From: Obrimoposthia wandeli
Taxonomy: Eukaryota
Direction of reading: 5' to 3'
Length of the DNA stretch: 64,000 nt
Assembly: GCA_977020255.1 (NCBI GenBank)
Contig: CDROCS010001760.1
Location: 62,001-126,000 of the forward strand
Of the stretch, positions 163 through 35,266 are shown piece by piece (within the stretch, counting starts at the first letter, position 1; the number at the start of each line of letters is the position of its first letter). The position numbers and the translations under genes were made by a program. Below the pieces are notes generated by a model. That model was not told the DNA's origin, did not search any database, and saw only the letters and a list, made by a program, of their open reading frames with translations.

Positions 163-263
163 TACTTGTTAATAGTAACGTAGCGTTAGTAAATTGCATT
201 ACGTTTGAGTCATTGTTTAATTAGTTGTTCAACTAATTTTTGATTTCTAGGAGTAGTAAATAA

Positions 264-1722: not shown

Positions 1723-2469
1723 CTACCAATTAATAACTTCGCCTTGCCAGTCAAGGTAGCTTGCTGTTTGGTCTAATGGCGCATCTTCAACAATATTTAG
1801 CAGCTGTTGAGCCACAAATTCAGCGCTAAAAAGTTTATTCGCGGGCACATTTTTTTGAAAAGGTTTGGATAACGGTGTATCAGTTGTCCCCGGATGAAAA
1901 GCAATTAACTTGATGTTCTTTGCGCGTCGAGCAAGCTCTATTGATGCAGTTTTTACCATCATATTTAATGCCGCTTTAGATGCGCGGTAACTATACCAAC
2001 CACCTAAACGATTATCACTGATACTGCCAACTCGGGCACTAAATAGCACGAATTTGCAGGGTGACTTCCCTGTCAATAAAGGCGTTAACTTTTGTATCCA
2101 CAACATTGGCGTTAATGTGTTTGATGTCATGACTTGTAAAAATGCTTGTGCATCGAAATCTTCTAAGCGCTTTTCAGGTTTAATGCTGTCGCTATGCAAT
2201 ACACCATTGCAGACAAATACGCGACTGATCGGCGCGCTATCAAATACTGCCAATTGTGTCACGGCTTTATCGATTGACTCAGCTTGATAGTCTGCAACGG
2301 TGATTTTTTTTATCTTAGTTGTATCAAGGTCAAAATCGGCATTATCAAAATTGCTGAAGTCTCGGCTAATCAATATCAGCGCGGTATTTTTTTCGGCTTG
2401 TGTTTGTAGCGCAATAGCTTTACCTATGTCGCTATTTGCGCCGATGATCAGTGTTTGTTCGGTTATCAT
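1723..2469 (-). CDS. SDR oxidoreductase, C-factor (CsgA)-like
   Basis: IIGANSDIG, SARVGSISDNRLGGWYSYRASKAALN (YxxxK), HPGTTDT. Confidence 0.9.
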   Translation of the reverse strand: MITEQTLIIGANSDIGKAIALQTQAEKNTALILISRDFSNFDNADFDLDTTKIKKITVADYQAESIDKAVTQLAVFDSAPISRVFVCNGVLHSDSIKPEKRLEDFDAQAFLQVMTSNTLTPMLWIQKLTPLLTGKSPCKFVLFSARVGSISDNRLGGWYSYRASKAALNMMVKTASIELARRAKNIKLIAFHPGTTDTPLSKPFQKNVPANKLFSAEFVAQQLLNIVEDAPLDQTASYLDWQGEVINW

Positions 2470-2857
2470 AACAAGTTCCTGAAGTGCAGTGAGTGGTTTT
2501 TATATTGAATATTTTAGCCAGCAGAACCGAGATTTGGTGGCGATATTTAGCTAGCAATAAATACACAGCATGGCTTATTTCTTTAAATATTGGCCAATTT
2601 AGTGGTGCAACCCAAAAACCTTTGCCGACCAAAGTCCAAGCACGATGTGTAACCTCAAGGCCGAGCAAAAGTTGTCCGTTATAATGGCCATGTAAAATTT
2701 TCATGGCTTGATCAAAACTAACGTTAGGGTAGAGCAAAGCAAAACCTTGCTGGTGTATGTCGACTAAATTAATAAGCTGGTTATTATCATATTTTTTTAA
2801 CTTTGCCATTTCTGTCGCGCACATTGGGCAATGGCCGTCATAAAAAATTGTTAGCAT
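2432..2857 (-). CDS. DUF393 / DCC-family thiol-disulfide oxidoreductase
   Basis: IFYDGHCPMC (DxxCxxC) N-terminal motif. Confidence 0.88.
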   Translation of the reverse strand: MLTIFYDGHCPMCATEMAKLKKYDNNQLINLVDIHQQGFALLYPNVSFDQAMKILHGHYNGQLLLGLEVTHRAWTLVGKGFWVAPLNWPIFKEISHAVYLLLAKYRHQISVLLAKIFNIKTTHCTSGTCYDNRTNTDHRRK

Positions 2858-2932
2858 GAAATATCTCCAAAATACTTTGTTGATAGATGGTTAACGTTTA
2901 TCTATCTGAGCCGGCGTACTTCACCTGACTTG

Positions 2933-3598
2933 TTAGGTGAATAACTGCTCCGCCTCACCGTCAAGTGATAGTTTAGTCAGCAGTTGCTCTGGTTTAGCAT
3001 AGCTTAAACGCGATAGCCTTTTACTGGTGTGGTAGCTGTCTAAGCCAGAAACCATGACAGTATTTAATGATTCAATGTCAATATAACCATCGTCTTTAAT
3101 GGCTTCTTCTGGGCACATAATGTGAGTAATTTCGCCAATCACTAATAAGGTACCATTGAGTTCAATAGGGACTATTTCTTTTAGCGTTAACGAGTATTTT
3201 AGCTGACTTTCCTTAACGAATGGCGCATCAACACCTTCGATAATTTCAGGCGTTAATCCTGTTTGTTTAAATTCACATTCGTCAGCACTATAGTTTGCAG
3301 ACGTTTGGTGAGCCGCACGCCAAAAACTCTCATGCACTTGATTAATAGTAAAATTTTTAGTCTGCTGAATATTTTCTAGAGTATGACGTTCAACACTGTG
3401 TGGACGAGTAATAAAGCCGACTAAAGCAGGGGAAGCACCCAGATGAAAAACCGAACTAAAAATAGCCAAGTTATTAACACCTAAGTTGTTGCGGGTGCCA
3501 ATAAGGTTAGCACTTTTGAACCCAGACAAGCTATTGATGACATGAGCACGGTAACGTGGTGCCATGTTACTCAGTTCATTACTATTGATATTTTGCAT
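2933..3598 (-). CDS. Flavin reductase family protein
   Basis: INSLSGFKSANLIGT, NLAIFSSVFHLGASP, FTINQV. Confidence 0.85.
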   Translation of the reverse strand: MQNINSNELSNMAPRYRAHVINSLSGFKSANLIGTRNNLGVNNLAIFSSVFHLGASPALVGFITRPHSVERHTLENIQQTKNFTINQVHESFWRAAHQTSANYSADECEFKQTGLTPEIIEGVDAPFVKESQLKYSLTLKEIVPIELNGTLLVIGEITHIMCPEEAIKDDGYIDIESLNTVMVSGLDSYHTSKRLSRLSYAKPEQLLTKLSLDGEAEQLFT

Positions 3599-3636
3599 TT
3601 ACCTGTGGCCGTATAAATTTCCTTAGTGGTTAATTA

Positions 3637-3663
3637 TTACGTAATTAAGCACTTTTACGATCA
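3637..3663 (-). promoter_or_regulatory. RpoE(ChrR-type) promoter
   Basis: Minus strand TGATCG, 16 nt, CGTAA upstream of the flavin reductase-DUF393-SDR genes. Confidence 0.75.
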
Positions 3664-4144
3664 CTTATGTATTAACTCAGTGACAATTAACTGTGTTGAG
3701 AAGTATTAATGAGCATGCTAGCAAAGGTAAAAAATTTGTCTTAAAGGTCACTGATAATATTTTTCGAGGGAGTTGTAGTGGTTTATTTGTTAGAGTTTTT
3801 TTCATTTTAAAAGTTTAAAAAGGTCTTTCGAAACCTAGTTTTTTTCTGATAAATTATTATAGCGACAAAGCTGTTTCTAGTGACAATAGTAGGCGCTGTT
3901 AACACACCGGCAGATTAGAAAAATTAAACTAATATTTGTAACCTAGCCATAGCGTTAAAAGCATTTCTATCGTGTTAATTATTTTTTGAAATTAAAAACA
4001 TATTGAAAACTTAGCTGCTAGTATTATATTCAATATACTTCAACTCGACGAGGTAACGTCCTTCAGAAGTATATAGTTTATTAAACTTATATGTTCAGGT
4101 TATCAATAATAAGCACTAAAAAGTGCACGAGATAACATCAGAGG

Positions 4145-5155
4145 TTGAACGTTTTGCATACAAAAAATTCATTATTATCACTAATCATTGTACTAATTAT
4201 TATCGGCCTTGGGATTATCTCTTTTGATCTACAACATCTTTGGAGCAAGCCTAGGTATCACGTCACAATTGCAGTCTCAAAAACCCCTTTATCTAGTCCC
4301 TTTTATGTTGCTGAATCTATTAACGCCTTTGATGAAACCTGCGTTGAAGTCGAATATAAGGAAGTTGTAGGAGGAAAAGTTGCTTTTGATAAAGTGATGA
4401 ACAGCGAAGTCGATTTTGGCACTAGTTCTGACTCTGTTATTGCTTTTCAAACGCTAACTGACAATGCTTTTGTCACCCATGCAATGTTTGTACAGTCGGA
4501 TAATGATGTGAAGTTAGTCACTCGCACAGTTGATAACTTTAGATCTACAGAGGATCTAAAGGGTAAAAGAATAGGCGTTACCAAAGGAACGTCCAGTGAA
4601 TATCTGTTAAGTACTTTACTTGCTATTGAAGGTTTAAGTTTTGAAGATGTTGAACTGTATCACTATAAGCCAGAAGAGTTGATAAAGGGGTTTCAAAATA
4701 ATGAGGTAGATGCGATTCTTCCGTGGGAACCCTTTGTTTTTGAAGTGTCACAATTACTCGGTGAGCAAGTCAAGATTCATGATACTAAAAGCTTAAGTAC
4801 CTTGAGTTTCAATTTAATATCTCAAACGGCAGATGGTCAGTTGGTAGAGAAAGCAACGTGTGTTATCCAGGGGTTACGTACCGCTATAGACTATATTGCA
4901 CTGTACCCAGAAGAAGCTAAAAAAATAGTTATCGCTGAACTTGATTTAGAGCCTGCATTTATTGATTGGGTTTGGCCTGATTATATTTTTAAACTTGGTT
5001 TAAATCAGTCATTGGTACTCAACATTCGATCACAAGCGACTTGGGCGATGGAAACACAAATGAGTGAACCGAGGAGCATTCCGCATTCAGAGCATTTTGT
5101 CGATAGTCGAGCATTGCTACAAGTTGACCCTGGGGCTGTAAATATATCACGGTAA
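4145..5155 (+). CDS. ABC-type substrate-binding protein (NMT1/SsuA-like) with N-terminal membrane anchor
   Basis: DLKGKRIGVTKGTSSEY, DAILPWEP motifs; one N-terminal hydrophobic helix; no permease or ATPase nearby. Confidence 0.75.
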   Translation: MNVLHTKNSLLSLIIVLIIIGLGIISFDLQHLWSKPRYHVTIAVSKTPLSSPFYVAESINAFDETCVEVEYKEVVGGKVAFDKVMNSEVDFGTSSDSVIAFQTLTDNAFVTHAMFVQSDNDVKLVTRTVDNFRSTEDLKGKRIGVTKGTSSEYLLSTLLAIEGLSFEDVELYHYKPEELIKGFQNNEVDAILPWEPFVFEVSQLLGEQVKIHDTKSLSTLSFNLISQTADGQLVEKATCVIQGLRTAIDYIALYPEEAKKIVIAELDLEPAFIDWVWPDYIFKLGLNQSLVLNIRSQATWAMETQMSEPRSIPHSEHFVDSRALLQVDPGAVNISR

Positions 5156-5168
5156 ATAAGGGGGGGTT

Positions 5169-6452
5169 ATGAAGTTAAGTTTACAGCAACAAATTTACTT
5201 TTTTACGTTAAGTAGTTGCTTGTTTTTTATTTTATTGGTGTTCAGTACTTTATGGTCAATTCAAGTCCTGGAAGTTGCTTTAGAAAGAGAGCGCTATGCC
5301 AATAAAGTCGAGAACCATACTAATATTTTAAAGCAATTCATTAGCAGTGAAGATATTTATGCTGAAGATTACAATACGGACGATTGGTTAGCTTTAGAGC
5401 GAAGGTTCTCGAGCTTACTCAAACTCACGCCAAATTTGACAGCGCAACAGCAAACCATTCAAAACAGTATAGAAAGTCAAAATAAGAATGTACTGCGTCT
5501 ATTTAATGCCATAAATAAAAACAAATTAAAAAATGCTAATGACAGTATTAAAAAGCATTTGAAAGTCAGGCTAATAACACAGCTTGAGGCCATAAAATCT
5601 GATTCAATACAGCTTTATACGATTGTGCAAAAAGATATTAATCGTATTGTTAGGCAACAAATTATAATTATTTTATCTGTTTTGGCTTTTAGTCTTTTTA
5701 TTTTGCTTTATGGTGGTTTTAAGTTAAGTAAAGTATTTAGAACATCGCTGAATGAAGTTAAATTAGCCTTTTCAAAAAACCGCAGTGGTAGTTTTCAAAA
5801 GATAGAGCTTTCAATTGCGTCTGAAGAATTTGAAAGTATCGCTAATGCTTTTAATGATATGAATAAAGAGTTGAGTGAAACGACAATATCTTTGGAGTCG
5901 ATGACAAAAATTGTTGCTGAAAGAACAAAGGTATTAGAGCAGTTATCTAATACCGACCCGTTAACTAAAGTCGCCAATCGTCGGGCATTATTTGAACGAG
6001 GTCATGCTGAATTTTCTCGCGTTCAAAGAAGTAAAAACCCCTTTACGGTGATTTTACTCGATTGTGATTTATTTAAGGCGATAAACGACGATTTTGGTCA
6101 TTTATTTGGTGATGAAGTACTGAAGCATATTTGTAAAATATGTACTGAGGAAATACGTAATATTGATTTTTTTGCTCGCTATGGTGGTGAAGAATTTATC
6201 ATTATTCTACCTAATAGTGAGGTGAATGGTGCTATAAAAACAGCTGAACGTATCCAGTGTTCTCTGGTTAATAATAGTATTGAATTTGAAGGCAAAGAGA
6301 TCCCTGTTACTTTAAGTATGGGAATTTGTACTCTTAATGAAAAGCACACTAATTTTGAACAGTTAATAAAGGATGCTGATGCTGCCATGTATAAAGCCAA
6401 GGAGAATGGCCGAAATAGGATCGAAGTTGCAGATAACGAATTAGATATTTAA
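5169..6452 (+). CDS. Membrane-bound diguanylate cyclase (two TM helices, HAMP-like linker, GGDEF)
   Basis: TDPLTKVANRR, RNID I-site, RYGGEEF, ADAAMYKAKENGRNR. Confidence 0.92.
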   Translation: MKLSLQQQIYFFTLSSCLFFILLVFSTLWSIQVLEVALERERYANKVENHTNILKQFISSEDIYAEDYNTDDWLALERRFSSLLKLTPNLTAQQQTIQNSIESQNKNVLRLFNAINKNKLKNANDSIKKHLKVRLITQLEAIKSDSIQLYTIVQKDINRIVRQQIIIILSVLAFSLFILLYGGFKLSKVFRTSLNEVKLAFSKNRSGSFQKIELSIASEEFESIANAFNDMNKELSETTISLESMTKIVAERTKVLEQLSNTDPLTKVANRRALFERGHAEFSRVQRSKNPFTVILLDCDLFKAINDDFGHLFGDEVLKHICKICTEEIRNIDFFARYGGEEFIIILPNSEVNGAIKTAERIQCSLVNNSIEFEGKEIPVTLSMGICTLNEKHTNFEQLIKDADAAMYKAKENGRNRIEVADNELDI

Positions 6453-6577
6453 TCTTTTACCTATTAAATATCTAATTGTACATCCTCAATATTAATCCTG
6501 AGTCAGGGCAGCAATAGGCAAACCTATTTTTAAACACCATGATTACTGCAAATTAATGGCTAGTAAGCAATTGTTAA

Positions 6578-8350
6578 TCAGAGAGAGCTTTTATCAGCAA
6601 CAATATTATTATTAGATATCCACACCGTCTGATAGGGCGCTAGCATCAGCTCTTGAGTTAATTCTGTTATTTCTTTTCCACTAATCAGTTCATGCCATGT
6701 TTCAGTCACAATTAAATTTAACTCGCTTAATGGTAATACTATTGGCTGATTTGAAATGTTACTAATACAAAAAATACTTTGTTTTCTATTTTGGCTTTGT
6801 CGCCAAAAACCGAATAGTTGTAAGCCTAAATGCAAAGTGAATTGGGTCGCATTAGGATGAAATGCTGGCTGTTTAATACGAGTATTTAATAGTGCTTTTA
6901 AAGTGGATAGCACCTTTGAATGATGCAAATCGTTATTCGCTAAAGCTGCCTCTAGCGCATCTTCTTGCCAACTATGACGGTTAATCGCTCGGTTGTGATG
7001 GGTATTCGACAGCTTTTTATAATCATTTTGCGTTCCTAGCATGCTATGAATATAAACTCCCGGTACACCTTCAAGCGCAAACATAATGGCATGAGCACAA
7101 ATAAAGCGTTCAAAATTCCATTGATCTTTGCCTTCAACAGTACCTTGTAAAGCATCATAAAGGGCAATATTCATTTCATAGGCTTTCTGTTCGCCCGTGT
7201 CAGATGTTCGCCATGAAATTTTACCGCCAAAGTTTTCGATGGTATGAATTAAGCTATCAAGTTCATCGTCACTTAATAACCCTTCTGCAGGACGTAAACC
7301 AATACCGTCATGCGAGGCAATAAAGTTGAAATACATGGTGCCATCTTGTGATGGCGGCATGCTCATTAACCAGCGCTTTAAATACAAGCAGCTACCGGTT
7401 AGTAAAGTATTTATCAGTAATGGCGGTAATGAAAAGTTATAAATACCATGTGCTTCATTAGCGTTACCAAAGTAGGTTAAGTTTTGGGTATTTGGAATGT
7501 TCGTTTCGGTAATAATAATAGCTTTGGGATCAGCAGACTCAATTAACGTACGTAATAACCTAACAACTTCATGGGTTTGGGGTAAGTTAATACTGCTAGT
7601 GCCGACTATTTTCCATAAAAATGCGATAGCATCAAAGCGAAATATTTTGACGCCACTATCAAGGTATTGTCGAATAATGGAAGTAAATGCTTTTAGCACT
7701 TCAGGGTTACGAAAATCAAAGTCGACTTGGTCATGACTAAAAGTACACCAAACAAATTTTTGACCCGCACCCGTCATAACCTCTTTTAATAACGGCGATG
7801 TTCGTGGTCGAACAACGTGAGATAAGTCATCATCTAACAGGGCAGTAAAAAAGAAATCGTGCCCTATGCCTTCACCTTTAACAAAATTATCGAACCAAAC
7901 ACTGCGGCTAGAACAATGATTGATCACCAGATCAGACATCAGCTGATACTCTTGACTGATTGCTGATATATCTTGCCACGTACCTAGTGACTCATTGACC
8001 GAGGAATAGTCAATAACCGAAAAGCCATCATCAGAGCTATAGGGAAAAAAAGGTAAAATATGAACACTGTTAATGGTGTTTTTAATATGATTATCTAAAA
8101 ACTTCTTTAAAGTATGCAGTGGCGGTTGAGCCTTTTTAATGATGCTATCACCATAGGTGATCAAGACAATATCCGCTTCTGACCAATGGTTGGTAAAAGG
8201 CTTCGCTGAATCTACATCACTTGAGAGTCGCATAACGTCGAGCAGTGAATCAGCTATTTCAGCCTCAGATTGCTGAAGCTCTACATCATGGTAAATAGTT
8301 GAAAGCTGCTGAATCAACTTGTTTTTTAATGTTTCAACCGGCGCTGACAT
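6578..8350 (-). CDS. GH13_18 sugar phosphorylase, probably glucosylglycerate phosphorylase
   Basis: [47 protein letters not shown]; gene context. Confidence 0.85.
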
Positions 8351-29834: not shown

Positions 29835-31982
29835 TTAGTTTAATTTTTGCTGTTTTTGTTCGTTCAGTAGCTTAATAAAATGATCTAATTTTACAGGTCG
29901 GCTGAAGACATAACCTTGTACCGAATTACATTTATTTCTGACCAGAAAGCTTAACTGTTCTTCGGTTTCTACACCTTCTGCCGTAACGCAAAGATTTAAG
30001 TTATGTGCCATGGCAATCACGGCACGTACTATCGCTTTATCGTTATCATCAGTAACAATTTCTTTAATAAATGATCGATCAATTTTCAAATAATCTAAAG
30101 GTAGTTTCTTCAAATATGACAATGAACTATAACCGGTACCAAAATCATCAACCGATACGCTCATACCAATCATTCTGACTTTACTCAGTAGTTTTTCAGC
30201 TATTGAGTAATCATCAACGAGTAGATCTTCAGTGACTTCTAGTTCCAATAAGCACGGATTAACGTCGTTGTCTTTAATACAAGCGCGCAGATGAGAGAAT
30301 AGCTTTTCATCGCTGACTTGGGTTGGTGAAAGGTTCATGGATATTTTAATGTCAAAACCTAATGCACTGATTTTTTTTGATATTTGACAAGTGCGACGAA
30401 TAACCCACTCTCCGATAGCAACAATTAAACCGCTCTTTTCTGCGACCGGAATGAAATCGTTAGGGCTAATCAAGCCTTTTTCTGGGTGGTTCCAACGGAT
30501 TAATGCTTCAGCTTTATTGATGCAATTAGTTTTTATATCGATGATGGGTTGTAAATACAATTCGAATTCGTTGTTTGTTAACGCTAGTTTTAAATCTTGC
30601 TCTAATTTTATTAAATTATGCGAATCATCTTTCATTGATTTTGAGTAAAACAAGACAGAATTCTGTTTTTTTTGTTTACCGTTATAAGCACTCAAGTCAA
30701 CGAACTTCATTAATTCTTCCACACTTTGTGCGTCATGAGGAAAGTTAGCAGCACCGATACTAACGCTGATATGAAAATCTTCGGCTTTACTGGTGTAGAA
30801 CGGCTTATTGATATTGTCTATGATGCGTTGTATTGCGGATTCACAGCCGACTTGGTTATCAATGTTATTAAGAATAATGGCAAATTCATCACCGCCAACT
30901 CGAGCGATAAAATCTGAGGTTTTAATGACGCTACTGATGCGGTTACTCAGTTCTACTAACAGTTTGTCGCCTTCTTCATGGCCATAGAATTCGTTATGCT
31001 GCCTGAAGTTATTGATATCTACATACAGTAAATAAAAGGGTTGGCTTGATGTCACATGCCCTTCTAAGGTTTGCCAAAAAGAAAACCTATTTGGTCGCCC
31101 AGTTAGCATGTCTTGTAAAGCCAGTTGCTCATTGCGCTGTACTAGATGTTTTATCTTGCTGATGTCATTAGCAAATATGATCCAGTTTTCTACTTCGTTG
31201 AGTTTATTTTTTACCGGGTAAAAGCCAATTTTTAGCCATTTTAATGTCGCTGGCGGCAAAATCCAACATAACTCACCATCCCAACTTGAATTGGTTGATA
31301 ATATTCGTTCATATTCGGGAAGCTGATTTTTCATCAGATCGATGATGATATCGATTGGTCGAGTCGTTTGCGCATTCATCATTTTATTTTGCTCAAAAAG
31401 ACTCAGTGCCGCTGAATTTTCAATACTGGTGGTAAAATCACTGCTGGCAATTAATACCGCAAACTCGGCATTTTCAATTACTTTGGCCAATGTAGCTAAT
31501 ACATTACTTTGTTCGGGCGAGTTTTTTAGAATAGACAGTAAACGGGTATGTAAGTATTCATTTTTCAGAAAAAGTCGATCGTAGGATAGTAAAACCTCAC
31601 GTGCGAGCTGTTTGGTTTTTTGCTGAAGAGTAAAGTTTTCTAATTGATTCGCAATCACTAAAAGGTTTTGTTGATCATACTTGATTGCGATAGCTTCTAA
31701 GTGCAATTCTTTATTATTACTGGTGATTTCGGTCCATAAACCTGAGCGTAACTTTCCATTACTTGCTTCATGCCATATCAATCTGGCATCGATAAGAAAA
31801 TCGAGTAAGAAAGGTGTGTCTTCGTTAATCAGAAAACTTTCTTGATTGATAGCTTGCGGGAAAAGATCTTTTATCCATGCACTATCGCCTTCAAGCAACT
31901 TTATGCTGCCTTTGTCTATGTCGATTACTTCGAGTACAACTTGCTCTAAGGCATTTAAAACTTTATTTAGTAGTGACGTCAC
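29835..31982 (-). CDS. GGDEF-EAL protein with uncharacterised N-terminal region and a PAS-like segment
   Basis: RVGGDEF, AEALIRW, DDFGTGYSSL, AEGVET; GTG start with GAGGT RBS, overlapping the GTPase gene by 20 nt. Confidence 0.92.
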   Translation of the reverse strand: MTSLLNKVLNALEQVVLEVIDIDKGSIKLLEGDSAWIKDLFPQAINQESFLINEDTPFLLDFLIDARLIWHEASNGKLRSGLWTEITSNNKELHLEAIAIKYDQQNLLVIANQLENFTLQQKTKQLAREVLLSYDRLFLKNEYLHTRLLSILKNSPEQSNVLATLAKVIENAEFAVLIASSDFTTSIENSAALSLFEQNKMMNAQTTRPIDIIIDLMKNQLPEYERILSTNSSWDGELCWILPPATLKWLKIGFYPVKNKLNEVENWIIFANDISKIKHLVQRNEQLALQDMLTGRPNRFSFWQTLEGHVTSSQPFYLLYVDINNFRQHNEFYGHEEGDKLLVELSNRISSVIKTSDFIARVGGDEFAIILNNIDNQVGCESAIQRIIDNINKPFYTSKAEDFHISVSIGAANFPHDAQSVEELMKFVDLSAYNGKQKKQNSVLFYSKSMKDDSHNLIKLEQDLKLALTNNEFELYLQPIIDIKTNCINKAEALIRWNHPEKGLISPNDFIPVAEKSGLIVAIGEWVIRRTCQISKKISALGFDIKISMNLSPTQVSDEKLFSHLRACIKDNDVNPCLLELEVTEDLLVDDYSIAEKLLSKVRMIGMSVSVDDFGTGYSSLSYLKKLPLDYLKIDRSFIKEIVTDDNDKAIVRAVIAMAHNLNLCVTAEGVETEEQLSFLVRNKCNSVQGYVFSRPVKLDHFIKLLNEQKQQKLN

Positions 31983-32481
31983 CGCTTGTGCACCTCAACA
32001 ATAGTTTAGCCATCGTTAAAAACATTTCTTCTACATTTTCACCTGTCTTAGCGCTGGTGGAAAATTGCAGGTCAAATAAATTTTTGTAGATTTCGTTTTC
32101 ACTGTTATCTAAATGCCAAGTTGCGGGTAAATCACTTTTATTTATCGCTAATATGGCAGGGCAATCGGTGACTTGTCGTGCGAGGGTATTAATGTCGATG
32201 CCTTCAAGCAAGGATGACGCTCGCGTTTGATCGACTACAATAATGTACCCTGATGCACCGCGTAAGTATCGCTCTTGAAAAACATTGTAACTATCATTAC
32301 CTTCCATATCCCATAACATGAACTGGACTTCGTCGTTTTCGATGGTGATAGTTTTTTTGTCAATTTTAACGCCAATAGTGGTGAGATATTTTTCACTAAA
32401 AATACCTTGCACATACTGTTTGACCAGACTTGTTTTTCCTACGCTGGATGCGCCTAAAAGGCATATTTTTTTCTGAATCAC
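31963..32481 (-). CDS. Rab/Ras-like small GTPase (Rup-type)
   Basis: G1 GASSVGKTS, G2 YLTTIGV, G3 WDMEG, G4 NKSD, G5 SAK; single domain of 172 aa. Confidence 0.92.
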   Translation of the reverse strand: MIQKKICLLGASSVGKTSLVKQYVQGIFSEKYLTTIGVKIDKKTITIENDEVQFMLWDMEGNDSYNVFQERYLRGASGYIIVVDQTRASSLLEGIDINTLARQVTDCPAILAINKSDLPATWHLDNSENEIYKNLFDLQFSTSAKTGENVEEMFLTMAKLLLRCTSGDVTTK

Positions 32482-32558: not shown

Positions 32559-34319
32559 TTACTCATGATTAATGTATATCACGTTAAACATTACAGTTCT
32601 TGCCGTACTGCTAATGCCAACAATATCTATTTGCCCTAAACCTAAAACATACATTTTATTTCGATCTAGACCTTTGTCTCTTAAAATGTCAGCACTGTTA
32701 TTGGCTCTTTTCATACTGAGAATATCGTTAGTTGCTTTATTACCCGTGCTATCACTGCTGCCCATAATTAATAAACCAAAATTAATATTAAGAGCATCAG
32801 CAAGCTGTTCTAATTGTTGTATGTATTGAAAGAGTCGCTGTAAAGACAATTGCATTTCAGGCGTAATATCTTCACTTGCGACAGAAAAATTTAATTGGAT
32901 TGATGCTATACGGCCAATGAGGTCGTCAAATAACGCCTGTTTAACTTGCTCGCTTGTGGTTAAAGATACGGGTGTTGTCTGTTGTAATTTTTCGGTGAGT
33001 AAGTTTCTATCTTGAGTAAACCCGGCAATGGTTAAGTTTGTGATTAATTGTTCAGTCTCAGTAATGCCTAGTGTACCAAAAAGGCTGAGTACATCGTCTT
33101 GCCAAGCTAAGTTAACACTGGGGAATTTTTTTATAATACGTTGAGCACGCAGTTGTAATATTTGTCGATCAAATGAATGAAAGTTACGTTCGGTGAGTTT
33201 TAACTGTGTTGTATCTACGCCATTACTTTCCAACCAGTCGGTAATGTCTAAGGCGTCAGGGTCTCGCAAAACATCTAAACTTATATCATTGAAGTTAGCA
33301 ATATTGAGTTGCTTTACGATGACACCTGGCTGAGCATCTAAGAGCATTATTTTTTCATGCAACTGTGAGCTCTTCAACCAATTAAAACTTTGGTAGCCAG
33401 CGTAAATAGAGATGATAACAACGATTGCCCAAGCAAACCAAGGACGTTTTTTCTTGCTGTTTTTTTCAGTTTTTTCTTCTGATAAAAGGCAGTCTCGCAA
33501 CAAGCTATCGGAGGCGGAAAAATATTGATTGTCACCATCAAAGTTATTCAACTCGTCATGATATAAGCTATGTATGTTTTCTAGTGTCAACTGTAGTTGA
33601 TCGTTTATTCGTTGTGGCGGGTTACCGATAATGGCAGCAACAACCAAAGCACTAGGACCTGGCTTAATTAACAAATTAAAGTTGTCGGTACTAACCGATT
33701 GAAGTTGTTCTTTTTGCCCTTCGTGGCTCGGTGAAAACGAATCACCAACAAAGTCATTAATCGCCGTTAACATGGCTGATACAATATCAGCGTCACTGTT
33801 ATCTTTGTTATCCAATGCGATGGTATTTAATAATAGCCCGGTTTCTCTGTGGATTAAAAAAACATGTTCAACACGATAAGCGAAGGTTTGTGAGGCGGCA
33901 TATTGCGCATAGCTAACACCGCTGCGTCGTGCTTCAAAGCGCCACTTTAAGCCTTTTATGGTTAAACTGTTTTCGAGTAACTGATTAGTTTTTTCCATAA
34001 AGTCGCTGAGAAAAGCAGCAACAGATTTTCTCACCAAACTACCCACCAGCGGGTATAGCGAACTGACCATTTGTTCACTATTATGGGCTACTGAGTTTTT
34101 AACTGAGTCTTCGACGAATGGCTGTAGTACTTTATTAACAGAGTTATCTTTTTTTTGCCTATCATGTAGTGCTTCAGTAATGACATCAGCGACTATATTG
34201 CGCGCATCTTTTTTTATGCACTCTGTTATTCTGCGGTTTTCTTGCCCCAGTATTAGTGAGCGTACTTGTTCTAGTTGTTGCTCTGACTCAGCATGTTCCG
34301 CTGTAGTATCAGTTGGCAT
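32559..34319 (-). CDS. Bitopic membrane protein: cytoplasmic domain, TM helix, periplasmic region, C-terminal OmpA-like domain
   Basis: TM PWFAWAIVVIISIYAGY; OmpA motif GSSDSTG...NDILSMKRA; TAATG coupling to the upstream gene. Confidence 0.8.
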   Translation of the reverse strand: MPTDTTAEHAESEQQLEQVRSLILGQENRRITECIKKDARNIVADVITEALHDRQKKDNSVNKVLQPFVEDSVKNSVAHNSEQMVSSLYPLVGSLVRKSVAAFLSDFMEKTNQLLENSLTIKGLKWRFEARRSGVSYAQYAASQTFAYRVEHVFLIHRETGLLLNTIALDNKDNSDADIVSAMLTAINDFVGDSFSPSHEGQKEQLQSVSTDNFNLLIKPGPSALVVAAIIGNPPQRINDQLQLTLENIHSLYHDELNNFDGDNQYFSASDSLLRDCLLSEEKTEKNSKKKRPWFAWAIVVIISIYAGYQSFNWLKSSQLHEKIMLLDAQPGVIVKQLNIANFNDISLDVLRDPDALDITDWLESNGVDTTQLKLTERNFHSFDRQILQLRAQRIIKKFPSVNLAWQDDVLSLFGTLGITETEQLITNLTIAGFTQDRNLLTEKLQQTTPVSLTTSEQVKQALFDDLIGRIASIQLNFSVASEDITPEMQLSLQRLFQYIQQLEQLADALNINFGLLIMGSSDSTGNKATNDILSMKRANNSADILRDKGLDRNKMYVLGLGQIDIVGISSTARTVMFNVIYINHE

Positions 34320-34864
34320 TATAGTTGGTCATCTTCTAAATTTGTTGCCATCGTTGCGAGTAATTTAGCGAGTGTTTTTCTATCGGTTTTCGATGAGGTT
34401 AAATCTTTTGAAACAGATTCAAGGTGAGTTTTTAATTGTGCAAGCTGATCATTGAAGTTACGGGTAAGCGACTGACTCTCACTGTCTAATGCTTGTTCTA
34501 TATTTTTAAAGTCTTGCTGAGTAACGCTAACAAACATTTCGTGTTCTGAGGTTAAACTAGTGAGGTTTTTTTCAATCGCAGTTTCATTATCTTCATGGCT
34601 TTTATCTGAACGTTGTATTTGCTGTTCTATCTCAGCAAAGCGTTCGCTAATATTATCTTGCATTTTGTCTAGACGATCGGTGAAGTTAATATTTTGCGTG
34701 TTAAGCGCTTGTTCCATGTCGTTGCGCGTTGAAATAATCTGTTTTTTAAGTTGCTGCTCAGCTACGCCAAAAACAATCTGCCGTAATTGATCTAGCTCAT
34801 TGACAGGGGCTGTGTCTTCTTCGGGAGATTTTTTGATATTTTTATGATTAGGCATCGACGACAT
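34319..34864 (-). CDS. Coiled-coil hypothetical protein
   Basis: Heptad-rich Q/E/L composition; C-terminal KTDRKTLAKLL; stop codon overlaps the next start. Confidence 0.75.
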   Translation of the reverse strand: MSSMPNHKNIKKSPEEDTAPVNELDQLRQIVFGVAEQQLKKQIISTRNDMEQALNTQNINFTDRLDKMQDNISERFAEIEQQIQRSDKSHEDNETAIEKNLTSLTSEHEMFVSVTQQDFKNIEQALDSESQSLTRNFNDQLAQLKTHLESVSKDLTSSKTDRKTLAKLLATMATNLEDDQL

Positions 34865-35185: not shown

Positions 35186-35213
35186 AAAAAAAAGCCTCAA
35201 CGCTTGTTGAGGC
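35186..35213 (-). terminator. Rho-independent terminator of the hmu-like operon
   Basis: Minus strand GCCTCAAC-AAGC-GTTGAGGC followed by T8. Confidence 0.8.
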
Positions 35214-35266
35214 CTTGGTTTTTAAACCACGATAAATAGCATGTATTCGTACCAATGTTGTCGTTA

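What the first reader, a model, noticed from the sequence alone, without database searches (positions are those of the whole stretch)
33480..33876. Predicted longin/roadblock-like domain on the cytoplasmic side of the OmpA-domain protein: candidate GEF or GAP
Seen: the segment VEHVFLIHRETGLLL...DADIVSAMLTAINDFVGDSF...LQSVSTDNFNLLIKPGPSALVVAAIIG lies just before the TM helix and has a strand-strand-helix-strand pattern. Known: longin and roadblock domains regulate small GTPases (Rab GEFs such as Mon1-Ccz1, and MglB as GAP for MglA). Inference from pattern resemblance only: this is the cognate regulator, linking a periplasmic cell-wall sensor to the GTPase.
Basis: inference. Interest (0 to 1): 0.75.

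Follow-up and report, generated by a model that had tools for sequence, protein, structure and literature searches.

The report
Membrane-anchored longin domain beside Rab-like GTPase
The cytoplasmic part of this cell-wall-anchored bacterial membrane protein is confidently predicted to fold like the eukaryotic longin domains that hold and switch Rab GTPases. This makes it the obvious, still untested, partner of the Rab-like GTPase encoded next door.

Summary
Residues 150-232 carry the quoted motifs, and a transmembrane helix follows at 293-312.

No PAS, GAF or profilin fold competes. The fold claim is therefore confirmed, and the domain is longin-type rather than roadblock-type.

The gene sits in the four-gene "Group 1 Rup" GTPase system described by computer analysis in 2014. 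There, this domain was left as "unknown". Gene order is kept in all 80 related loci long enough to show it. The module also occurs without the OmpA part, still beside the GTPase.

GEF or GAP activity cannot be tested here. The domain has no invariant Arg or Gln, and its most conserved element is the single-helix face that longin and roadblock dimers use to bind GTPases. I therefore favour a platform or GEF-like role over GAP.

The scan already reached the same reading on another piece of this dataset (s1-204576, s1-204521).

The parts
33471..33884 (-). Longin-type domain, residues 146-283 of the 586-aa protein. Element order: b1 146-157, b2 163-168, a1 175-194, b3 208-210, b4 215-220, b5 224-232, a2 236-258, a3 265-275.
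33885..34064 (-). Conserved pre-longin helical segment, residues 86-145. It holds P90, G93, R97, K98, N112, W126, R127, A130 and G134, all invariant or nearly so.
   Evidence: This is the most conserved stretch of the cytoplasmic region: mean identity 50% and entropy 1.62 over 71 sequences. It is modelled as helices with only moderate confidence, pLDDT 63-69 over residues 91-120.
34065..34319 (-). Variable N-terminal helices, residues 1-85.
   Evidence: AF2 models helices at 5-24, 27-58 and 60-79. Mean identity is 31%.
33384..33443 (-). Transmembrane helix, residues 293-312, preceded by a Lys/Arg-rich stretch.
   Evidence: The hydropathy window reaches 1.45. AF2 models a helix at 294-319.
32889..33383 (-). 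Periplasmic linker region, residues 313-477, with no family match.
   Evidence: No Pfam or NCBIfam hit. Conservation is low. Longer relatives show weak BON-domain hits here.
32622..32888 (-). OmpA-like peptidoglycan-binding domain, residues 478-566.
   Evidence: Pfam PF00691, E 7.9e-08, 33 bits against a cut-off of 27.2. D523, N531, S535 and R538 are invariant among 17 homologues.
34319..34864 (-). Upstream 181-aa coiled-coil protein. Its stop codon overlaps the start of the OmpA-family gene by one base (TAATG).
   Evidence: ORF list. Only weak coiled-coil-type Pfam hits. The overlap was read directly. The gene is present upstream in 79 of 80 loci.
31963..32481 (-). 172-aa Rab-like small GTPase (Group 1 Rup type). 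Its G3 motif is WDxEG[I/N/V]D, without the catalytic Gln.
   Evidence: Pfam Ras E 5e-30 and Roc E 4.8e-24. The best solved relatives are Rab35 and Rab5 at about E 1e-22. The G3 column holds I, N, V, T or S in 78 of 78 sequences.
29835..31982 (-). 715-aa output enzyme with the layout PAS - long helix - PAS - GGDEF - EAL. It overlaps the GTPase gene by 20 bases.
31521..31643 (-). Inter-PAS helix of the output enzyme, residues 114-154. It carries the invariant Q125, A127 and R128 (motif Q-x-T-L/K-Q-x-A-R-E).
   Evidence: Alignment of 44 orthologues. AF2 models a helix at 114-154. This corresponds to the invariant glutamine noted in PMC4316618.
35191..35216 (-). Strong terminator hairpin of the upstream CobN-like gene. 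It marks the 5' limit of the four-gene operon.
   Evidence: An 11-bp stem followed by a T-run.

Best explanation
Residues 146-283 of the OmpA-family protein form a longin-type domain of the longin/roadblock superfamily. It is held at the inner face of the cytoplasmic membrane by the transmembrane helix that follows it. That helix is tethered in turn to peptidoglycan by the periplasmic OmpA-like domain.

Shown here:
- the fold
- the topology
- the conserved four-gene context
- the conservation pattern

Inferred:
- Like other longin and roadblock domains, it pairs side by side, here probably as a homodimer.
- It offers its single-helix face (helix 175-194, with invariant D189 and D193) as a platform for the Rab-like Rup GTPase encoded 78 bases downstream.
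- Together with the highly conserved helices just before it (invariant R97 and R127), it sets where the GTPase sits and in which nucleotide state. This would most likely be as an exchange factor or a state-specific membrane anchor.
- The GTPase lacks its own catalytic glutamine. The switch-off residue would more plausibly come from the invariant Gln125/Arg128 helix of the PAS-PAS-GGDEF-EAL output enzyme, as proposed in 2014.
- The output of the pathway is c-di-GMP turnover.

My odds for the individual steps:
- longin/roadblock fold: 0.93
- direct binding of the GTPase: 0.6
- GEF-like role: 0.3
- GAP role: 0.15
For: Fold:
- The AF2 model has mean pLDDT 84.2, and 75-97 within the domain.
- Foldseek against the PDB returns only longin and roadblock proteins at E 2.6e-4 to 5e-3: TRAPP Bet5/Trs23, AP sigma, Mon1-Ccz1, Fuzzy, LAMTOR and MglB.
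- The exhaustive search of 48,161 chains gives 50 of 50 top rows in this superfamily.

Faint sequence echoes:
- Fuz_longin_1 matches 4 members of the domain alignment, Sybindin 3 and Intu_longin_3 one, out of 71.
- An Asgard roadblock aligns on helix a1 to strand b5 at E = 1.

Context:
- The operon matches the Group 1 Rup neighbourhood of PMC4316618.
- Gene order is identical in 80 loci from Colwelliaceae to Vibrio and Marinomonas.
- Planctomycetota relatives keep the GTPase nearby.
- A variant made of the module plus a transmembrane helix only has the GTPase 72 bases downstream.

Conservation:
- The cytoplasmic part is 43-86% identical, against 24-73% for the periplasmic part.
- Within the domain, helix a1 has the lowest entropy, 1.01. 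This is the face that binds GTPases in known longin and roadblock platforms (PMC3747258).
- No other roadblock or longin gene lies in the operon.
Against: - No interaction was tested, and the tools offer no complex prediction.
- Pfam, NCBIfam and PDB sequence searches give no significant match for the domain. Homology therefore rests on a predicted structure.
- The best structural matches are SNARE longins (VAMP7, Sec22b, Ykt6), which bind helices rather than GTPases.
- The domain has no invariant Arg or Gln, so any catalytic contribution must be indirect.
- Conserved gene order shows a shared pathway, not physical contact.
Confidence: 0.55

Rival explanations
1. The longin domain is a GAP platform. 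It would bind Rup-GTP and promote hydrolysis, either allosterically as MglB does for MglA or as part of a composite GAP with the output enzyme's Gln/Arg helix.
Against: MglB works by repositioning Arg and Gln residues that belong to MglA itself (PMC3747258), and Rup has no such Gln. No Arg or Gln is invariant inside residues 146-283; R149 is kept in 69% of sequences and R158 in 65%. The best-matching GTPase regulators are GEFs: Fuzzy, Mon1-Ccz1 and TRAPP.
Confidence: 0.15
2. The longin domain does not touch the GTPase. Instead it binds a helix, as SNARE longins and the dynein or LAMTOR roadblocks do. The helix would be either the protein's own N-terminal helices (autoinhibition) or the upstream coiled-coil protein. 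In this reading the domain serves as a scaffold or dimerisation module.
Against: The module stays beside the GTPase even when the OmpA part is lost. No other candidate GTPase platform exists in the operon. The two roles are not exclusive.
Confidence: 0.2
3. The domain is a small-molecule sensor of the PAS, GAF or profilin-like kind that only resembles longin domains superficially.
For: These folds share an alpha/beta sandwich core with roadblock domains (PMC10933270).
Against: No PAS, GAF or profilin chain appears among the top 50 of the exhaustive search. By contrast, the true PAS domains of the neighbouring enzyme retrieve only PAS and LOV chains with the same tools.
Confidence: 0.04
4. The fold is an artefact of structure prediction from a shallow alignment.
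For: The alignment has only 71 sequences, pTM is 0.58, and helix a1 has pLDDT 75-78.
Against: All five models score mean pLDDT 78-84, and the strands and C-terminal helices score 90-97. Independent faint sequence hits to longin families agree with the fold.
Confidence: 0.03

Closest known systems
Group 1 Rup GTPase system (Wuichet and Sogaard-Andersen 2014, PMC4316618)
   Same: The same four genes are present: a coiled-coil protein, an unknown domain followed by a transmembrane helix and OmpA, a Rup GTPase without the G3 glutamine, and a GGDEF-EAL output with an invariant Gln in its N-terminal region.
   Different: The paper left the cytoplasmic domain unassigned ('Unc') and proposed no regulator fold. 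Here it is resolved as a longin-type domain, and the output N-terminus as PAS-helix-PAS. I found no experimental work on the system.
Eukaryotic longin-domain Rab GEFs: Fuzzy-Inturned (CPLANE), Mon1-Ccz1, TRAPP Bet5/Trs23
   Different: Sequence identity is only 8-19%. There is a single longin domain per chain instead of tri-longin or multi-subunit assemblies. The domain is fused to a transmembrane helix and a peptidoglycan-binding domain. GEF activity is untested.
MglB / MglA (bacterial roadblock GAP and Ras-like GTPase)
   Different: MglB is a soluble stand-alone roadblock with the order alpha-beta-beta-alpha-beta-beta-beta. This domain has the longin order with two C-terminal helices and is membrane-anchored. 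MglA carries its own catalytic Arg and Gln, and Rup lacks the Gln.
SNARE longin domains (VAMP7, Sec22b, Ykt6)
   Different: They sit at the N-terminus before a SNARE helix and regulate fusion, not a neighbouring GTPase. No SNARE motif is present here.
MotB / Pal-type OmpA-like anchors
   Same: The layout is the same: N-terminus in the cytoplasm, one transmembrane helix, and a periplasmic OmpA-like domain with the conserved Asp/Arg pair.
   Different: The cytoplasmic part is about 290 residues long with a folded signalling module. There is no stator or Tol partner gene.

Membership tests
Longin/roadblock structural superfamily | Five-stranded antiparallel sheet with one helix on one face and two on the other | tested here: met
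Longin/roadblock structural superfamily | Longin order of elements (b-b-a-b-b-b-a-a), as opposed to roadblock order (a-b-b-a-b-b-b) | tested here: met
Longin/roadblock structural superfamily | Significant match to a Pfam longin or Robl_LC7 profile | tested here: not met
   The window protein has no hit at E <= 1. Only faint sub-threshold hits appear in 8 of 71 members: Fuz_longin_1, Sybindin and Intu_longin_3.
Longin/roadblock structural superfamily | Side-by-side dimer that binds a small GTPase on the single-helix face | not testable with these tools
   No multimer prediction is available. The only indirect support is that helix a1 is the least variable element.
Group 1 Rup system | Conserved neighbourhood of a coiled-coil gene, an Unc-TM-OmpA gene, rup, and a GGDEF/EAL or histidine-kinase output | tested here: met
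   for the window. All 80 loci with enough sequence keep the order. A histidine-kinase plus response-regulator variant occurs in Planctomycetota.
Group 1 Rup system | GTPase lacks the catalytic Gln of the G3 motif | tested here: met
   The column after DxEG holds I, N, V, T or S in 78 of 78 sequences.
Group 1 Rup system | Output protein has an N-terminal region with an invariant Gln | tested here: met
   Q125 is invariant in 44 orthologues, together with R128; Q220 is also invariant.
MglB-type GAP | Partner GTPase supplies its own catalytic Arg and Gln, which the roadblock dimer repositions | tested here: not met
   The G3 motif has no Gln, and I saw no Arg in the switch I stretch of the window sequence.
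Longin-domain GAPs with an arginine finger (FLCN, NPRL2 and SMCR8 type; this feature is from my own knowledge) | Invariant catalytic Arg within the longin domain | tested here: not met
   No invariant Arg lies in residues 146-283; R149 is kept in 69% of sequences and R158 in 65%. The invariant R97 and R127 lie outside the domain.
Longin-type Rab GEFs | Stimulates GDP release from the cognate GTPase | not testable with these tools
OmpA-like peptidoglycan-binding domain (PF00691) | Profile match above the curated cut-off, and the conserved Asp/Arg pair | tested here: met
   33 bits against a cut-off of 27.2. D523 and R538 are invariant in 17 homologues. That this pair binds peptidoglycan is from my own knowledge.

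The most novel reading that the evidence does not exclude
The domain is a true homologue, not a look-alike, of the longin domains of eukaryotic Rab GEFs (the Fuzzy/Mon1/HPS1 and TRAPP type). Together with the Rab-like Rup GTPase it would form a bacterial Rab-longin exchange pair, wired to the cell wall on one side and to c-di-GMP on the other. The longin-Rab partnership is currently traced only to Asgard archaea and eukaryotes. If this reading holds, the partnership is widespread in bacteria across many phyla, and is either older than thought or was exchanged horizontally.
Probability: 0.2. Interest if true: 0.85.

Novelty: new variant of a known kind. Interest (0 to 1): 0.62.

Why it matters
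No Rup GTPase has been characterised at the bench, and no regulator has been assigned to any. Resolving the "unknown" domain as a longin-type platform gives a concrete hypothesis that can be tested directly: which protein loads or holds the GTPase, through which face, and with which residues.

It also bears on evolution. A 2013 review stated that prokaryotes have no longin domains (PMC3747258), and later work found them in Asgard archaea (PMC10933270). Here a longin-type domain sits beside a Rab-like GTPase in a family with 1,206 protein clusters at E <= 1e-30. The family reaches Gammaproteobacteria, Planctomycetota, Thermodesulfobacteriota, Nitrospira, Acidobacteriota and Verrucomicrobiota.

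For bacterial physiology, it suggests a route from the peptidoglycan layer to c-di-GMP through a small GTPase switch.

Natural soluble versions of the module exist, which makes the biochemistry practical.

Tried and rejected
- **Sequence searches of the cytoplasmic region.** The searches were against the PDB with a single sequence, the PDB with a profile of residues 1-320, the PDB with a profile of the domain, and Pfam and NCBIfam. None gave a significant hit. Only the E = 1 alignment to an Asgard roadblock is topologically sensible.
- **Shared motif between the coiled-coil protein and the N-terminal helices.** BLASTP between the two, to test an apparent shared L-x-x-L/V-R motif, found nothing.
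- **A roadblock or longin domain in the GGDEF-EAL protein's N-terminus.** Rejected. That region is PAS-helix-PAS.
- **A PAS, GAF or profilin reading of residues 146-283.** Rejected by the exhaustive fold search.
- **Stand-alone short homologues.** The search returned mostly gene fragments on short contigs. Two apparent stand-alone cases, L085 and L087, look like frameshifted assemblies with split genes and were not used.
- **Paper searches.** One search for 'Rup' was swamped by the plant RUP1/RUP2 literature. Narrower searches found no experimental work on the system.
- **Co-variation between the domain and the GTPase.** Not attempted. About 78 paired sequences are too few.
- **N-terminal helices 1-145.** These were not searched as a separate model, so I make no statement about their fold class.

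Full report
**What is at the site.**
Four genes lie head to tail on the minus strand:
- a 181-aa coiled-coil protein (34864..34319)
- a 586-aa OmpA-family protein (34319..32559)
- a 172-aa small GTPase (32481..31963)
- a 715-aa GGDEF-EAL protein (31982..29835)

The first two genes overlap by one base (TAATG), and the last two overlap by 20 bases. A strong terminator hairpin at 35216..35191 closes the preceding CobN-like gene. The four genes therefore form one operon.

A hydrophobic helix follows at 293-312, after a Lys/Arg-rich stretch. Pfam finds an OmpA domain at 478-566, above its cut-off. The protein thus has about 290 cytoplasmic residues, one transmembrane helix, and a periplasmic part ending in a peptidoglycan-binding domain. 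The close homologues are from Colwelliaceae, with Cognaticolwellia at 84% identity.

**The fold.**
No sequence method assigns the cytoplasmic region. I collected homologues down to 29% identity from a search of 1.84 billion cluster representatives. That search found 3,627 clusters at E <= 1e-3 and 1,206 at E <= 1e-30, and the whole of residues 10-315 is conserved as a unit. I aligned 71 of them (A3) and ran AlphaFold2.

The model has mean pLDDT 84.2. Its elements are:
- helices over residues 5-145
- strands at 146-157 and 163-168
- a helix at 175-194
- strands at 208-210, 215-220 and 224-232
- helices at 236-258 and 265-275
- the transmembrane helix at 294-319

The structure searches agree with one another:
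- Foldseek against the PDB returns only longin and roadblock proteins at the top. These are TRAPP Bet5/Trs23, AP sigma subunits, Mon1-Ccz1, Fuzzy, Rag C-terminal domains, LAMTOR, MglB and Asgard roadblocks, at E 2.6e-4 to 5e-3.
- A search that does not depend on Foldseek, against 48,161 PDB representatives, gives the same picture. All 50 top rows belong to this superfamily, and no PAS, GAF or profilin chain is among them.

Longins align across residues 146-283, including both C-terminal helices. Roadblocks align only across 147-259. The domain is therefore longin-type.

Two faint sequence signals point the same way:
- The domain profile aligns helix a1 through strand b5 to an Asgard roadblock at E = 1.
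- Among the 71 members scanned one by one, sub-threshold Pfam hits recur to Fuz_longin_1 (4 members, best E 0.006), Sybindin (3 members, best E 0.0035) and Intu_longin_3 (1 member).

**The system it belongs to.**
The operon is the "Group 1 Rup" neighbourhood of Wuichet and Sogaard-Andersen (PMC4316618). [quoted passage not shown] The output's N-terminal region carries an invariant glutamine. The authors suggested that this glutamine replaces the one missing from the GTPase.

I confirmed each feature:
- The GTPase is Rab-like: Pfam Ras E 5e-30, and the best solved relatives are Rab35 and Rab5.
- The residue after DxEG is I, N, V, T or S in 78 of 78 orthologues.
- The output enzyme's first 287 residues fold as PAS - long helix - PAS.
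- Q125 and R128 in that helix are invariant in 44 orthologues.

I found no experimental study of any Rup system, and no paper assigning a fold to the unknown domain.

**Evidence that the domain and the GTPase belong together.**
- A scan of species-representative genomes gave 171 relatives. In the 80 loci kept, the gene order is identical wherever the contig is long enough. These come from Colwelliaceae, Paraglaciecola, Alteromonas, Glaciecola, Marinomonas, Vibrio and Oceanospirillaceae.
- The cytoplasmic part is 43-86% identical across these loci. The periplasmic part is 24-73% identical and the coiled-coil protein 27-85%.
- Relatives at 34-38% identity keep a Ras/Roc GTPase and the small upstream gene nearby. 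These include Planctomycetota and Thermodesulfobacteriota. In one arrangement a histidine kinase and response regulator replace the GGDEF-EAL output.
- Natural variants exist without the OmpA part. One has only the module plus a transmembrane helix, with the GTPase gene 72 bases downstream. Two others end right after the longin domain.
- No other roadblock or longin gene is present in the operon.

**How it probably works.**
In known longin and roadblock complexes, two domains pair through strand b3 and helix a1. The GTPase sits on the face that carries that single helix. The domains are platforms rather than catalysts, and other parts supply GEF or GAP chemistry (PMC3747258; also PMC10933270 and PMC13408092).

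The conservation pattern here fits that picture:
- Helix 175-194 is the least variable element, with entropy 1.01 and invariant M183, F190, D189 and D193. Strands b1 and b5 come next.
- No Arg or Gln is invariant inside the domain. That argues against an arginine-finger longin GAP.
- The GTPase lacks the intrinsic Gln, which argues against an MglB-type mechanism.
- The invariant basic residues R97 and R127 lie in the helices just before the domain. Residues 86-145 are the most conserved segment of the protein, yet residues 91-120 within it are modelled with only moderate confidence. This is the pattern expected of a partner-binding element.

My best reading is therefore a membrane-proximal longin platform, probably dimeric. 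It would bind the Rup GTPase and, with the preceding helices, act as an exchange factor or a state-specific anchor. The Gln125/Arg128 helix of the output enzyme remains the better candidate for the switch-off step.

The link to peptidoglycan is inferred only from the OmpA-like domain and its invariant Asp523/Arg538. All interaction and enzymatic steps are inferred, and none is shown.

**Rivals.**
- A GAP role remains possible (0.15).
- A helix-binding scaffold role is suggested by the SNARE longins being the top structural matches, and by the many helices around the domain (0.2). It is not exclusive of GTPase binding.
- A small-molecule sensor fold and a prediction artefact are both unlikely.

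**Novelty and earlier notes.**
- The operon type is known from computation.
- As far as the searchable literature goes, assigning its unknown domain to the longin type is new.
- The architecture of longin, transmembrane helix and OmpA-like anchor is also new on the same basis.
- The scan itself reached the same reading earlier on another piece of this dataset (s1-204576 for the domain, s1-204521 for the operon). My tests were run independently and agree with it.
- I rate this a new variant of a known kind, with moderate to high interest. It turns an uncharacterised bacterial GTPase system into a set of direct experiments.
- It also places a longin-type domain beside a Rab-like GTPase in many bacterial phyla.

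Noticed in passing
window 31122-31982 (-), residues 1-287 of the GGDEF-EAL protein: The unannotated N-terminal region folds as PAS - 40-residue helix - PAS, like NifL, DosP and PpsR. The helix carries an invariant Q-x-T-x-Q-x-A-R-E motif (Q121, T123, Q125, A127, R128, E129). This is the 'invariant glutamine' of the 2014 paper, now placed in a structural element.
   Followed up: yes
window 31963-32481 (-): The Rab-like GTPase has the G1 motif GASSVGKT, G4 NKSD and G5 SAK, but its G3 motif is WDxEG[I/N/V/T/S]D in 78 of 78 orthologues. The Ras Gln61 equivalent is never Gln.
   Followed up: yes
window 33960-34049 (-), residues 91-120 of the OmpA-family protein: This stretch lies in the most conserved part of the protein (invariant R97, near-invariant K98 and N112) yet has the lowest model confidence, pLDDT 63-69. 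It may become ordered only on a partner.
   Followed up: partly
L086:4001-5379; proteins P0284, P0294, P0279: Natural versions of the cytoplasmic module exist without the OmpA domain. One keeps only a C-terminal transmembrane helix and has the GTPase gene 72 bases downstream. Two end right after the longin domain and would be convenient soluble constructs.
   Followed up: partly
L082 and L083 (Planctomycetota), 1772-7277: A rearranged version of the system has the order GTPase, histidine kinase, GerE-type response regulator, small upstream protein, then the module protein (758 aa, no Pfam OmpA hit).
   Followed up: no
P0174 residues 403-449; P0180 residues 450-506: Longer relatives show weak BON-domain hits in the periplasmic stretch between the membrane helix and OmpA. 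The equivalent region of the window protein (residues 313-477) has no family match and might be BON-like.
   Followed up: no
window 35191-35216, both strands: A perfect 8- to 11-bp hairpin with T-runs on both strands lies between the CobN-like gene and the Rup operon. No sigma-70-like promoter was found on the minus strand in the 325 bases upstream of the first operon gene.
   Followed up: no
L085 and L087: In two long-contig assemblies the module, OmpA and GTPase genes appear split or fused into odd products, for example one 368-aa product with both OmpA and Ras hits. These are most likely frameshift errors of the assemblies.
   Followed up: no
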